A stretch of DNA of 64,000 nt from Phyllobates terribilis (Eukaryota). A program made the position numbers and the translations under genes. Location of the stretch: assembly GCF_046119375.1 (NCBI RefSeq), contig NW_027362767.1:257300001-257364000 (forward strand), read 5' to 3'. This document shows, piece after piece, positions 33,171-40,989 of this stretch; within the stretch, counting starts at the first letter, position 1; each line of letters begins with the position of its first letter. The notes beneath the pieces are model-generated. The model saw only the letters and a program-made list of their open reading frames with translations, was not told the origin of the DNA and searched no databases.

Positions 33171-36100
33171 CTTGGTGGTCTTAATACGGCCTCCTTGGAA
33201 ACAGATCCAGCCGGAGTTATCGGGAAGGGTTTGGCATTCCTCTTCCTGCAGACAAGGCTCCATGTCACACCACCATTTCCCCATTACGATGGAAGCTGTG
33301 GATATGATCACAGGGTTATCCCAACACCACAGAGAGGCAATTATCTGCTCCTCTTTCCAGAAACAGTCCTGGTGCAGGGGCTGTGTCTGGTCTTGCTGTA
33401 TAGCACTATTGTAATGAATGGCACTGAGCTGCAATACCACAGACAAACTGTAAACAGGGGTAGCGCTGTTTCTGGAAGGAGGCGGCCATGTTTTTTTAAA
33501 TGTTCCACATCACATGGGGTCAAGAAATGCCAAAGAGAGGACCCCAGTGACATGTCTCGCTCCTTAGGGCCACCCTTTAGGCATAACGTAGTATATCTGG
33601 TTTTGCCCAGAGTGTTCTCTTAAATCATATGTGTGAAACTTTAGCCCTTGGGGCGAATCTGGCCCACACGGTGGTTAGATTTGGCCCGCGACACCAGAAC
33701 CACCACCCCTATGTGGGGTCCATTATACTGTATGGAGGACTATGTGGGGCCCATTATTCTGTATGGAGGACTATGTGGGGTCATAATACTATATACTGGT
33801 TGGTCTGGAACTTTGTCCAAGGTTTTTTTATTTTGGCCCTGTGTGTTTGAGTTTGACATCCCTGCCTTTATCAGTCTCGACAAGTTTGTTCACTATTTAT
33901 CAATTATAAGCATTCATACTAAATTATCCATAAGGGAGCGCTAGTCCATTGGCATTTATATGCCATTAACTATCTCAAGGAGGCTAGGTATAAAATACTA
34001 TTATGTGATTTGTTCACACAGAGAAGTGGGGCAGTGATGAGTGGTTATATAGGGGGCAGTATATTCATTTATACATTGCACCCGTACCCAGGCGTTACTA
34101 CCTGACTTACCATCCACACATGACGGTTTGTCCCGGGTCGTCCCAGCCACTTTTCCCGGCAGGCAGGAGCACTGCACTGTCTGCGATCGCTCCTCGATAC
34201 GGTTCCTGTTACAACAGCGATGAGCCGACACCACCCGACAGGTACCACCAGCTGTTGGGTATATAGTTACAGGGTCACTTACATTAGGAAAGACCATACA
34301 GAACACCCTACAGGACACATGCCAATACATCAGCTTTTAAAACGGTGGTGTACGACAAGATTAAAGAGTATGCTTTCTTTTACTTTATAGCAGCTCCACC
34401 ATAGTCCATAGGCTGTGTCTGGTATTGCAGCTCGGCTCCATTTAAAGGTTATTCCCTAAATCACAAGCTATCCAATAAGGATTACTGGCTGATGGCTGGG
34501 GGTCCGATGGCTGAGACCACCAGTGATCCCAAGACAGTGGGATTTGCATCCCGTCTTGAATGGAGCGGAGGGGTCTATGGGGCTGCCGGAAATATTGAAG
34601 TGTTGTACTCTGAGGTTGAGCATTTGCACCTCTGCTCCATTCAAGACTGGAACCTCAAAAGTATTTCTGCAGCCTGAGTCTCGCTCTCAGGATTGCCAGT
34701 AGTGAATCCCCAGCGTTTACACCCTGATGGATCAGCAAGTTGTACCTTATCCTATGGATGGTTGATAATTTCTAACTTTGGGAATAAGCCTTTAATTTAG
34801 TGATCTTTTATCCTACGGCAGAGGTTGGGGGAGGCTCCTGCTGCAGCCAGTTGTCTTAGGACCAGACACAGGACAGTGAGGAGGGGGATATGGCTGATCT
34901 CTTGGGACACAGAGAACATTTCTTTATACGTTTTTCAAAAAAAGGAGGAAATGAATGGCAGGAAGAGTTGGGATATGTCTTATTTTTTTTGTGCATTTTC
35001 TGTGGTTTAGTGTTTTTTTAAAGGGGTTGTGAGAAAGTGTTTCTTAGGATGTACTCAGACAACCACAAAGCGATTGGGGTTACAGCCGCCTTGTCTCTGA
35101 CCTGAGCGAACAGCCTCGTAGACATAAAATGAGGCTTTTTGCTCTGGGCAGGAACCTATATGATCCTGGGAATGCATCCTTACTTTGGAGGACCAGGCAT
35201 AGGCAGATTACTCAGACAGGCCATTAATTCTAATTAGACCCCTGCAGTACTTGATTTCCTCTGTGGCGGTGCTGCAGGGACAACGCACACCAGATGGCAG
35301 ATTTCAGCTGCAGATCGCTCTGTGATCGCCACATCATCTGGTCTATAAATGGCCCCCTATATTGACAGTGTAGGCCGTTTCTGCTGTAGAGTGAAATGAC
35401 GAGGTCTCCTCTCACATCCCGCATTTCCATCTCTGCTATGTGGTGTGCACCCCTCCGCTATCCCTCACACTTGTTTCTCTCATCTCTCTCCATCTGTCTC
35501 CCCCCACATCCCTCATAGTCTCTGCTGCAGCCCTGTTCCTCTCTTGCTAGCAGATGGCATGTGCACACCCGGTCCTCATTTCTTAAGAGTCTGTGCCAGG
35601 ATCTGGGAACATATCTGGCAAGAGTAACAGTAATGATTTTTTTTTTCCCTGGCAATGGTCAGGGCAGGAAGGCAAGCAATGGGCGGCTAGGGGAATCCAT
35701 GTGCTGAACTGAAGGAGTGCCACTAAGTAGGGCGAACAGGGGAATGATGTGTTTGGATGAAGTCAGGCAGTAGAGCTGAAGAAACTATCATGGAGGTTGG
35801 AAGATGGGGAGAGGGTAGGCAAGTAGGGGGATAGTATCAGCAACTTACAGATGACTGGCAGCTTGTTGGTGTCTGTGAAGTACTGGTAGTGCGGAGGCCA
35901 CAGCGGAGACAGGTCTGGCATCTGAACGTTGTGCTTGGCATAGGAGGCTGTGACCACTGACCAGAAGCAGGACATGGACAGGAGGACACCGAAGCTATCA
36001 GAGAAGATCAGAAAGGGAGGTCAGGTTACAGAACGTCAGGAGCATACGTGTTACCAGAGCCACCGGTCGGCACTGGAGGTCAGGAGGACGGAGGAGGAAA

Positions 36101-40288: not shown

Positions 40289-40989
40289 GGAATCGGGTGT
40301 AATAACAGAGCTGGGAGGATTGCTTCTTCCTCTCCTCATCATCCGGTGAGGCTGTAATCCATCTGGGATGTGTGAGTGAGGGGGAGGAGGGCTGGGTGCC
40401 ATGTGTGATAACAGAGAGTGGGGAGTGATGAAGAGGAAGCAGTGGGGGTCCATGGTGCCCTGTATGAGAGGTGCCAGCTGGGTGTGAGGGAGGGAGGTGG
40501 ATTCTGCCCCTCACCATATCTCCACCTTTCTCATTGCACAGCCCACCATGCTTTCTCCTACTTTTCCCACTAGTGACTTTCGCCCGCTCCTTTCCATTCT
40601 CAGTTTTCCTCCAGACGTGCTGCCCACGGCTCCTCCTGTTCACTTGCTCATCCTCATTCATTTCTCACCAGTGGATGCCGTCATTTCATCTCAATACTTT
40701 CCCTGGGTTTAAACTGAAACTGGCGTCTCCAACCTGCGTCCGTAAAACAAGGGCTTTTATTATTTTTTACCTCCCAGGGGTCATTAGAAATGAGACACAG
40801 GGGTTTAAGCACAGAGCATTCGCAGCAGTGGGGCTCACCATCTAATTTTTCCTATTTTAGACCCACAAGACGTCAACTCCGCTGGGGTGACACAGCCACT
40901 GTAGCAAAGACATGAACCCCATAATAAATGCAAATGTAGCCACATTGCATCCCGCACGTCACCAGGAATCCAAACCTACCGGACGTGTG

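What the first reader, a model, noticed from the sequence alone, without database searches (positions are those of the whole stretch)
33171..40362. TAFA1-like neurokine gene in an Xp11-syntenic block: candidate ohnologue lost in mammals
Seen: an intact 10-Cys TAFA core closest to recalled TAFA1 ([28 protein letters not shown]) but with distinct substitutions ([25 protein letters not shown]). Known: human TAFA1-5 are on 3p14 (two genes), 12q14, 1p13 and 22q13, none on X. Xp11 and 3p14 share ohnologue pairs (TFE3/MITF, FOXP3/FOXP1, PRICKLE3/PRICKLE2). Inference: a whole-genome-duplication sister of TAFA1 retained in frogs, and so a potentially uncharacterised secreted ligand.
Basis: partly seen in the sequence, partly recalled or inferred. 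Interest (0 to 1): 0.7.

Follow-up and report, generated by a model that had tools for sequence, protein, structure and literature searches.

The report
Second TAFA1-type neurokine gene beside TIMM17B
This frog carries an intact, transcribed gene for a small secreted brain-signalling-type protein that is an old sister copy of TAFA1, kept next to TIMM17B from gar and bowfin to amphibians, lizards and echidna but not found in placental mammals, birds or teleosts, and hidden in databases under the name "TAFA-1".

Summary
Two minus-strand exons (34251-34111, 33295-33171) encode a complete 10-cysteine TAFA domain (Pfam PF12020, E 4e-20 and 4e-18).

It has five coding exons from 40288 to 27391.

Contigs of four public runs carry exons 2-3-4 joined exactly at the predicted GT..AG sites, so the gene is transcribed and spliced. 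Against a ranid frog the mature domain shows 41 synonymous and 0 non-synonymous differences.

It is not the TAFA1 orthologue. Other frogs, a newt, caecilians, a lizard (Pogona), gar and reedfish each have a canonical TAFA1 as well as this type.

This "type B" lies tail-to-tail with TIMM17B in this frog, spadefoot toad, lizard, echidna and bowfin. It also has its own pro-peptide motif. The split is therefore at least as old as bony vertebrates.

A whole-genome-duplication origin fits the synteny but is not proven, because no shark copy was seen. "Lost in mammals" is too broad, since echidna keeps an intact copy.

No searchable paper names this gene. The scan had not noted it on other DNA.

The parts
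40266..40288 (-). Coding part of exon 1: ATG GGC TGT AGG CTA CAG CGA AG (MGCRLQR plus 2 bases), donor GT at 40265-40264
   Evidence: Sequence. The ATG corresponds to the start of the Spea, Leptobrachium and Pelodytes proteins. tblastn of Leptodactylus P0122 covers 40453-40268.
40289..40453 (-). Upstream stretch in frame with exon 1 (MDPHCF...), most likely 5' UTR.
   Evidence: Which upstream ATG is open differs between frog species (Lithobates MDYSL..., Leptodactylus MDPRCF...), so this part is not conserved as coding.
35849..35994 (-). Exon 2: rest of the signal peptide ([19 protein letters not shown]) and the type-B pro-region (...[19 protein letters not shown])
   Evidence: Acceptor gatag|C and donor T|gtaagt. 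Carried by RNA contigs of 4 runs and joined to exon 3. 90% identical to Leptodactylus P0122 residues 61-109.
34111..34251 (-). Exon 3: first half of the TAFA domain ([46 protein letters not shown])
   Evidence: Pfam TAFA 3.6e-20. 100% identical to other neobatrachian proteins. Joints 34251>35849 and 33295>34111 in contigs.
33171..33295 (-). Exon 4: second half of the TAFA domain (A)SIVMGKWWC...GGRIKTTK, donor AAG|gttaga
   Evidence: Pfam TAFA 3.8e-18. All four spliced contigs stop matching at exactly 33171 and run on for a further 315-499 nt that lie outside the stretch laid.
27391..27408 (-). Exon 5: IHPRY and stop
   Evidence: tblastn hit IHPRY. Acceptor tttgtctttttag| followed by TGA. The same mini-exon and C-terminus occur in echidna and in other type-B proteins. 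Its use in this frog is inferred, not seen in reads.
29942..31791 (.). 41-nt tandem array (45 copies) inside the last intron
36230..39318 (.). Two tandem arrays in intron 1: 70 nt x 7 at 36230-36751 and 35 nt x 40 at 37898-39318
15583..26572 (+). TIMM17B, convergent (tail-to-tail) with the TAFA gene
Evidence: Tim17 Pfam on exon ORFs 16630-16743 and 17055-17210. tblastn with Tim17 genes of Amia, Spea, echidna and Zootoca.
8199..14545 (-). PQBP1-like gene
   Evidence: tblastn matches to the WW-domain gene next to Tim17 in Amia L001 and to the 193-aa gene in Spea L002. The name rests on conserved position. Pfam found nothing on the two exon pieces tried.
4629..4859 (-). NDUFB11-like exon

Best explanation
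The locus is a functional five-exon gene on the minus strand (coding 40288 to 27391). It encodes a small secreted TAFA/FAM19A-family protein with three parts: a signal peptide ([27 protein letters not shown], probably cut before KHNVQ), a roughly 30-residue pro-region with a conserved HY.Y...LPVIS motif, and a 10-cysteine TAFA domain ending KTTKIHPRY.

It is not TAFA1 itself. It belongs to a second, ancient TAFA1-type lineage, here called type B, which sits tail-to-tail with TIMM17B. Type B coexists with canonical TAFA1 in ray-finned fishes outside teleosts, in amphibians and in a lizard (Pogona); it is also annotated in many other squamates and in echidna. It most likely arose with the vertebrate genome duplications as the Xp11-block counterpart of the 3p14 TAFA1 gene. 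It was then lost several times: in therians, in birds, turtles and crocodilians, in teleosts, and probably in sharks, coelacanth and Xenopus.

Inferred mechanism: like FAM19A1-4, it keeps the CC pair and all ten cysteines. It should therefore be able to form a disulfide-linked complex with the cysteine loop of neurexins inside the secretory pathway, and so tune neurexin modification and synapse properties. It may also act as a soluble ligand.

What is shown: gene structure, transcription, splicing, purifying selection, paralogy, distribution and microsynteny. What is inferred: secretion, neurexin binding, site of expression and a genome-duplication origin.
For: Domain and cysteine pattern:
- Pfam TAFA matches on both core exons.
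- The spacing equals the published TAFA pattern.

Gene model:
- All splice sites are canonical.
- Intron positions and phases match those of the echidna gene.

Transcription:
- Contigs of runs X1-X4 join 33171-33295, 34111-34251 and 35849-35996 with 0 or 1 mismatch per piece.
- The skipped parts end CT..AC on the plus strand, which is GT..AG on the minus strand.

Selection:
- Window against Lithobates over exons 3 and 4: 41 synonymous differences over about 58 sites, and 0 non-synonymous over about 203 sites.
- Window against Spea: pS 0.54, pN 0.03.
- The neobatrachian mature domain is identical in Hyla, Engystomops, Lithobates, Leptodactylus and the window.

Two genes per species:
- Type A and type B proteins both occur in Engystomops (P0145/P0004), Leptodactylus (P0143/P0122), Mixophyes (P0169/P0003), Pelodytes (P0141/P0144), Lissotriton (P0200/P0081), Rhinatrema (P0138/P0121), Microcaecilia (P0136/P0128), Pogona (P0104/P0129), reedfish (P0070/P0035) and gar (P0074/P0216).
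- Where contig lengths are given, the two lie on different contigs.

Microsynteny:
- Amia: PRA1-family gene, TAFA-B, Tim17, WW gene, GPKOW.
- Spea: kinase, TAFA-B, Tim17, PQBP1-like, ESSS.
- Echidna and Zootoca: kinase, TAFA-B, Tim17.
- Window: NDUFB11, PQBP1, TIMM17B, TAFA-B.

Tree and signature:
- TAFA1 plus type B form a clade at 100/100. Type B forms a clade at 87/49. A tree with type A also held as one clade is not worse (lnL +0.84, p-AU 0.53).
- The pro-region motif is shared from reedfish and bowfin to squamates.
Against: - The tree has only 87 columns. Support for the type-B clade is moderate, and type A is an unresolved comb.
- The shark TAFA1 shows mixed states (CCNKN and IVIG as in type A; GNR and TTK as in type B), so it could be a pro-orthologue of both types. 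That would make the duplication younger than the genome duplications.
- No chondrichthyan, coelacanth or lungfish type B appeared among 340 proteins gathered. These were annotated proteins only, so absence is weak evidence.
- The Xp11/3p14 paralogy was recalled, not tested.
- The tissue of the RNA runs is unknown. They are labelled 'RNA?' and are taken as RNA only because the contigs are spliced.
- The RNA contigs extend 26-366 nt upstream of exon 2. An in-frame upstream ATG (40453) could therefore be in the mRNA and would put the hydrophobic segment about 70 residues from the N-terminus.
- No signal-peptide predictor was available.
- The AlphaFold model was poor (pLDDT 61), and no solved TAFA structure exists by sequence.
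- I could not confirm a canonical TAFA1 in this very genome.
Confidence: 0.85

Rival explanations
1. It is an ancient duplicate of TAFA1, but it was made by a small-scale (segmental or transposed) duplication in the stem of bony vertebrates. It is not a genome-duplication ohnologue, and the shark gene is the undivided pro-orthologue.
For: Only one TAFA1-type core was seen in chondrichthyans (P0140, P0162, P0167, P0218), and it mixes type-A and type-B character states. Reedfish A and B differ at only 5 of 87 core positions. The tree does not resolve the shark gene.
Against: The copy sits in a block whose neighbours have paralogues beside TAFA1/TAFA4 on human 3p14 (PRAF2, TFE3, FOXP3 and PRICKLE3 against ARL6IP5, MITF, FOXP1 and PRICKLE2; recalled map knowledge). 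A random landing there is unlikely. The catshark gene spans 690 kb like canonical TAFA1. A Seong-lab preprint places the whole family on one ancestral chromosome that was then duplicated in 1R/2R. TAFA domains evolve so slowly that 5 differences are compatible with more than 430 million years.
Confidence: 0.3
2. It is simply the frog's TAFA1 orthologue moved to a new place.
For: NCBI names the frog proteins 'chemokine-like protein TAFA-1'. The domain groups with TAFA1 at 100/100.
Against: Four other frog genera have a canonical TAFA1, whose 87-residue core is identical to chicken and mouse and whose gene lies on another contig, in addition to this type. The same TIMM17B-linked gene exists in bowfin, lizard and echidna. 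The window gene differs from frog TAFA1 at 18 of 87 core positions.
Confidence: 0.03
3. It is a decaying or untranslated relic that only looks intact.
For: The upstream ATGs are variable, and the first exon carries a short upstream ORF in this species. The tissue and level of expression are unknown.
Against: The reading frames are open and all splice sites are canonical. Spliced transcripts occur in four runs, with contig depth up to 338. There are zero non-synonymous changes against 41 synonymous ones versus a ranid.
Confidence: 0.02

Closest known systems
TAFA1 / FAM19A1 (canonical, human 3p14.1)
   Same: Same Pfam domain and the same ten cysteines with the same spacing. It shares [23 protein letters not shown] and the ...KTT(K/R)IHPR. 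C-terminus on a separate mini-exon. The two form one clade at 100/100 against TAFA2/3/4 and a lamprey sequence.
   Different: - Location and size: next to TIMM17B and about 13 kb here (0.74 kb in echidna), against a giant gene of 690 kb in catshark.
- Residues: CCNRN not CCNKN, IV(T/M)G not IVIG, KTTK not KTTR.
- Pro-region: its own ...HY.Y...LPVIS motif in place of ...HHLHRPE.
- Both genes coexist in the same species.
FAM19A5l of zebrafish (preprint 10.1101/2020.08.11.245738)
   Same: It is a precedent for a TAFA-family paralogue dated to the 1R/2R duplications that mammals lack. That paper places the family on one ancestral chromosome, VAC D.
   Different: FAM19A5l belongs to the TAFA5 lineage, which has 8 cysteines and lacks the CC pair. 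The present gene belongs to the TAFA1 lineage. The preprint's text names no TAFA1 paralogue, although it sampled anole and gar, which both have one.
FAM19A1-4 as neurexin ligands (Khalaj et al. 2020, PMC7480106)
   Same: It keeps the CC pair that FAM19A5 lacks and that is thought to be needed for disulfide bonding to the neurexin cysteine loop.
   Different: Binding was never tested for this lineage. The anuran domain carries 13 substitutions relative to the newt type B, several of which change charge (E>R, K>Q twice, N>D, G>E).

Membership tests
TAFA / FAM19A family (Pfam PF12020) | TAFA domain match above the curated cut-off | tested here: met
   72.7 and 66.2 bits for the two exon ORFs against a cut-off of 25. 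Together they cover profile positions 1-90.
TAFA / FAM19A family (Pfam PF12020) | Ten cysteines spaced CX7CCX13CXCX14CX11CX4CX5CX10C (TAFA1-4 type, with the CC pair) | tested here: met
   Counted on the exon 3 and exon 4 translations. The pattern is taken from PMC7480106.
TAFA / FAM19A family (Pfam PF12020) | N-terminal signal peptide (secreted protein) | tested here: inconclusive
   From ATG 40288 there is a basic n-region, the hydrophobic stretch [14 protein letters not shown], and S-Y-A before KHNVQ. In the Engystomops orthologue the equivalent segment is modelled as a helix (residues 16-37). No signal-peptide predictor was available, and an in-frame upstream ATG exists.
TAFA / FAM19A family (Pfam PF12020) | Expression mainly in the nervous system; covalent binding to neurexins | not testable with these tools
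   The RNA runs are coded and give no tissue. Binding is a bench test.
Canonical TAFA1 orthologue group | Diagnostic residues CCNKN, [8 protein letters not shown] and, in bony vertebrates, KTTR | tested here: not met
   The window has [13 protein letters not shown] and KTTK.
Canonical TAFA1 orthologue group | The only TAFA1-type gene of the species | tested here: not met
   Four other frog genera and nine further taxa have two genes. This could not be checked in this genome itself.
TIMM17B-linked TAFA1 paralogue ('type B', unnamed) | Tail-to-tail neighbour of TIMM17B | tested here: met
   Window: TAFA exon 5 at 27.4 kb, TIMM17B exons at 15.6-18.5 kb on the other strand. The same arrangement holds in Amia, Spea, echidna and Zootoca.
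TIMM17B-linked TAFA1 paralogue ('type B', unnamed) | Pro-region motif (H/P)HY.(Y/F)...(L/I)P(V/I)I.GG.C and C-terminus KTTK-IHP(R/K/Q). | tested here: met
   The window has [21 protein letters not shown] and KTTK|IHPRY. The motif is present in most full-length type-B proteins; echidna is degenerate.
2R ohnologue of TAFA1 | Both copies present on both sides of the ray-finned / lobe-finned split | tested here: met
   Gar and reedfish as well as amphibians and a lizard have both types; bowfin and echidna were seen with type B only.
2R ohnologue of TAFA1 | The two copies lie in sister paralogous blocks derived from one pre-duplication chromosome | not tested
   Rests on recalled human positions: TAFA1/TAFA4, ARL6IP5, MITF, FOXP1 and PRICKLE2 on 3p14, against TIMM17B, PRAF2, TFE3, FOXP3 and PRICKLE3 on Xp11.23. 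The two ohnologue papers held no text on these genes. The preprint's VAC D statement agrees in outline.
2R ohnologue of TAFA1 | Copy, or trace of a copy, in cartilaginous fishes | tested here: inconclusive
   Only one TAFA1-type core was seen in four chondrichthyans among annotated proteins. Their genomes could not be searched.

The most novel reading that the evidence does not exclude
Type B is the missing Xp11 member of a fourfold TAFA paralogon: 3p14 with TAFA1 and TAFA4, 12q14 with TAFA2, 1p13 with TAFA3, and Xp11 with type B. That would make it a sixth ancestral TAFA subfamily, so far unnamed. It has its own conserved pro-peptide. Therians, archosaurs, turtles and teleosts lost it independently. 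In anurans it went through a burst of 13 or more substitutions and was then frozen, which suggests a changed partner or role in frogs.
Probability: 0.55. Interest if true: 0.6.

Novelty: new member of a known kind. Interest (0 to 1): 0.5.

Why it matters
TAFA/FAM19A proteins are studied as neurexin ligands and neurokines almost only in mouse and human, on the assumption that there are five genes.

An additional, strongly constrained TAFA1-type gene in amphibians, squamates, monotremes and basal ray-finned fishes has three consequences:
- Automated annotation labels both genes 'TAFA-1' in these animals, so orthology-based transfer of function or expression data can mix two genes.
- The ancestral vertebrate set was larger than the mammalian one. 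That matters for reconstructing how the neurexin-modifying system evolved.
- Non-mammalian models offer a natural test of what a second TAFA1-type ligand does. Candidates are newt, anole and gar. Xenopus seems not to have the gene.

The gene is also a clean marker for the history of the Xp11.23 block.

Tried and rejected
As the tool advised, I laid the part beside it (32900-36100). Exons 1 and 5 therefore lie outside the stretch and their joints were not seen.
- The AU tests for 'frog A plus B as one clade' were void, because frog type A is identical to chicken and mouse in the core and was left free. The amphibian A plus B clade was 10.6 lnL worse but not rejected (p 0.15).
- AlphaFold2 on a 35-row alignment gave pLDDT 61 and pTM 0.30. 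I judged this too poor for a fold search, so none was run.
- There is no solved TAFA structure by sequence. NCBIfam holds no TAFA model.
- The texts of the ohnologue papers (PMC13450315, PMC8040251) do not mention TAFA, TIMM17 or TFE3, and their supplements are not held. A search for a paralogon paper on MITF/TFE3/FOXP found nothing useful.
- A search for TAFA6, FAM19A6, tafa1l, TAFA1-like and FAM19A1-like found no paper on such a gene.
- Notes of this scan hold nothing on TAFA or MITF in this genome.
- I first took the kinase next to the gene for PIM2. Its exon translations read like CDK20 instead (by recall).
- The look-up of encoding contigs had no record for Engystomops type A.
- The joined step was left out. 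The exons were searched by reference one at a time. Database orthologues whose core is identical to the window's exon 3, 4 and 5 translations (P0122, P0004) stood in for the whole protein. The substitution counts were made exon by exon and summed.
- I met no N stretches and no contig that I took for human.
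Full report
WHAT IS THERE

On the minus strand, ORF 34001-34330 contains [49 protein letters not shown] 33159-33446 contains [41 protein letters not shown]. Both match Pfam TAFA (PF12020) at 3.6e-20 and 3.8e-18, covering profile positions 1-50 and 46-90 of 90. The ten cysteines have exactly the spacing CX7CCX13CXCX14CX11CX4CX5CX10C given for FAM19A1-4 by Khalaj et al. (PMC7480106).

GENE MODEL

Aligning frog proteins found back to the window, and reading the junctions, gives five coding exons:
- E1: 40288-40266 (MGCRLQR plus AG, donor gtaagt).
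- E2: 35994-35849 (rest of the signal peptide and a pro-region ending LPVI).
- E3: 34251-34111.
- E4: 33295-33171 (donor AAG|gttaga).
- E5: 27408-27391 (tttttag|ATT CAC CCT CGC TAC TGA, that is IHPRY and stop).

All sites are GT-AG.

The ATG at 40362 opens only MDYSLTG-stop in this species. The ending KTTKVRP* reads through the E4 donor into the intron.

The start at MGCRL is the only one shared by the Spea, Leptobrachium and Pelodytes proteins. Upstream ATGs differ from species to species, so I take them for 5' UTR. An in-frame ATG at 40453 remains a caveat.

TRANSCRIPTION

No run on record as RNA holds the stretch. Even so, the contigs of four small runs from one study (X1-X4) carry 33171-33295, 34111-34251 and 35849-35996 joined to each other.
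- Each piece has 0 or 1 mismatch.
- The skipped parts end CT..AC on the plus strand, which is GT..AG on the gene's strand.
- The four spliced records are 415 to 1387 nt long.
- Three of them (X2-X4) cover all three exons and carry a further 315-499 nt past E4 and 26-366 nt past E2. The X1 record holds only the last 53 nt of E4.

Spliced contigs mean RNA. The gene is therefore transcribed and spliced as predicted, and the E4 donor at 33171 is used. The tissue is unknown.

CONSTRAINT

I counted substitutions exon by exon. Against Lithobates (L007), E3 plus E4 show 41 synonymous differences over about 58 synonymous sites, and none over about 203 non-synonymous sites. Against Spea, pS is 0.54 and pN is 0.03.

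The 87-residue core and the IHPR that follows are identical in Hyla, Engystomops, Lithobates and Leptodactylus proteins. The window's E3, E4 and E5 translations match them.

ORTHOLOGUE OR PARALOGUE

The searches return two kinds of protein, both named 'TAFA-1'.

Type A is the canonical form:
- It has ...HHLHRPE / [28 protein letters not shown] and KTTR.
- Its 87-residue core is identical from frogs to chicken and mouse.

Type B is the form in the window:
- It has a pro-region (H/P)HY.(Y/F)...LPVIS, then CCNRN, IV(T/M)GKWWC and KTTK-IHPR.

Both types occur in Engystomops, Leptodactylus, Mixophyes, Pelodytes, Lissotriton, Rhinatrema, Microcaecilia, Pogona, reedfish and gar. Where contig lengths were given, they lie on different chromosome-scale contigs.

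Of 340 proteins gathered, 34 are type B. They come from anurans, a newt, two caecilians, many squamates, echidna, bowfin, gar and reedfish. None comes from teleosts, birds, turtles, crocodilians, therians, coelacanth, sharks or rays. Xenopus and Rhinophrynus showed type A only. These are annotated proteins, so absences are weak evidence.

A frog- or amphibian-specific duplicate is contradicted as well.

TREE

On the 87-column core (62 rows, lamprey outgroup), TAFA1 plus type B form a clade at 100/100. Type B is one clade at 87/49. Type A is an unresolved comb. Holding type A together as one clade is not worse (lnL +0.84, p-AU 0.53).

Anuran type B sits on a long branch (0.37, support 100/99):
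- It differs at 13 core positions from newt type B and at 18 from frog type A.
- By contrast, reedfish A and B differ at only 5.

So the frog lineage changed fast once and was then frozen.

SYNTENY

Type B lies tail-to-tail with a Tim17 gene in four other species:
- Bowfin: PRA1-family gene, TAFA-B, Tim17, WW-domain gene, GPKOW.
- Spadefoot toad: kinase, TAFA-B, Tim17, 193-aa gene, ESSS.
- Echidna and the lizard Zootoca: kinase, TAFA-B, Tim17.

The window has the same order: NDUFB11-like at 4.6-4.9 kb, PQBP1-like at 8.2-14.5 kb, TIMM17B from 15.6 kb, and TAFA-B at 27.4-40.3 kb. This agrees with earlier notes on the window.

The echidna gene is intact. It has four exons in 740 bp of 72% G+C DNA, with GT-AG introns. 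The three introns within and after the TAFA domain sit at the same positions and phases as the frog's. 'Lost in mammals' must therefore be narrowed to 'not seen in therians'. The catshark TAFA-1 gene spans 690 kb, like canonical TAFA1.

ORIGIN

From recalled human map positions (not tested here), TIMM17B, PQBP1, PRAF2, GPKOW, TFE3, FOXP3 and PRICKLE3 are on Xp11.23. TAFA1, TAFA4, ARL6IP5, MITF, FOXP1 and PRICKLE2 are on 3p14. TAFA2 and TAFA3 lie on 12q14 and 1p13, regions that share other gene families with Xp11.

A TAFA1-type gene in the Xp11 block is what a genome-duplication sister of TAFA1 would look like. A Seong-lab preprint places the whole family on one ancestral chromosome duplicated in 1R/2R and describes another member lost in mammals, FAM19A5l. 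A 2024 reconciliation infers ten TAFA genes in the jawed-vertebrate ancestor without naming them (PMC10792014).

Against this, no shark type B was seen, and the shark gene has mixed character states. A small-scale duplication in the bony-vertebrate stem therefore remains possible. I put the genome-duplication origin at about 0.55-0.6.

HOW IT PROBABLY WORKS (INFERRED)

The protein has a signal peptide, a short pro-region and a disulfide-rich TAFA domain that retains the CC pair absent from FAM19A5. FAM19A1-4, but not FAM19A5, form covalent complexes with the neurexin cysteine loop during passage through the secretory pathway.

The same mode is the best guess here. The conserved type-B pro-region and the charge-changing anuran substitutions are the parts most likely to give it a distinct role.

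The AlphaFold2 model was too poor to use, and no solved relative exists by sequence.

NOVELTY

Genome pipelines already predict these proteins but call them TAFA-1 or FAM19A1-like. No paper in the searchable library names or studies a TIMM17B-linked TAFA1 paralogue. A supplementary figure of the 2020 preprint, which is not held, might show it.

I class it as a new member of a known kind, of moderate interest.

PROCEDURE

They were handled by reference one at a time, and database orthologues stood in for the whole protein. 

Noticed in passing
L002:4940-7817 (Spea), also the L003 and L004 upstream genes: The 339-345 aa kinase that flanks type B in toad, echidna and lizard reads like CDK20/CCRK (MEQYSLLGRIGEGAHGIVFKAKH..., ...ALLHPYFFGEPLPAHHSELPIPQR). 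It does not read like PIM2, as Xp11 synteny would suggest. In bowfin the neighbour is a PRA1-family gene instead. The identification is by recall only; Pfam says just Pkinase.
   Followed up: partly
window 41881-45360, 49687-51093, 54367-64000: Large satellite arrays lie upstream of the gene: 45-nt units (about 77 copies), 32-nt units (44 copies), and a 65% G+C 45-nt array of more than 213 copies that runs to the end of the window. They produce the very long spurious ORFs in several frames. No gene was recognised in 40.5-64 kb.
   Followed up: partly
window 33649-33862 (intron between exons 3 and 4): A short repeated element here attracts RNA-contig depth of up to about 266,000, with many 'goes back' joints and variants. 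It is a highly expressed or highly repeated family, not part of the TAFA transcript.
   Followed up: no
window 2-862, 10652-11603, 18947-19966, 20529-21556, 23560-24393, 45580-46582; L001:13961-16775: An ORF of about 345 aa inside the bowfin TAFA-B intron matches six places in the window at 25-43% identity. It is probably a shared transposon family, and it includes the insertions already noted in TIMM17B.
   Followed up: no
L003:10001-10740 (echidna): The echidna type-B gene is extremely compact (740 bp, introns of 81-154 nt, 72% G+C), against 13 kb here and 36-61 kb in ranids and reedfish.
   Followed up: partly
window 40289-40453: The frames upstream of the conserved start differ between frogs. 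MDYSL... is open in Lithobates but closed after 7 codons here. MDP(H/R)CF... is open here and in Leptodactylus. NCBI models therefore carry different, probably spurious, N-terminal extensions.
   Followed up: partly
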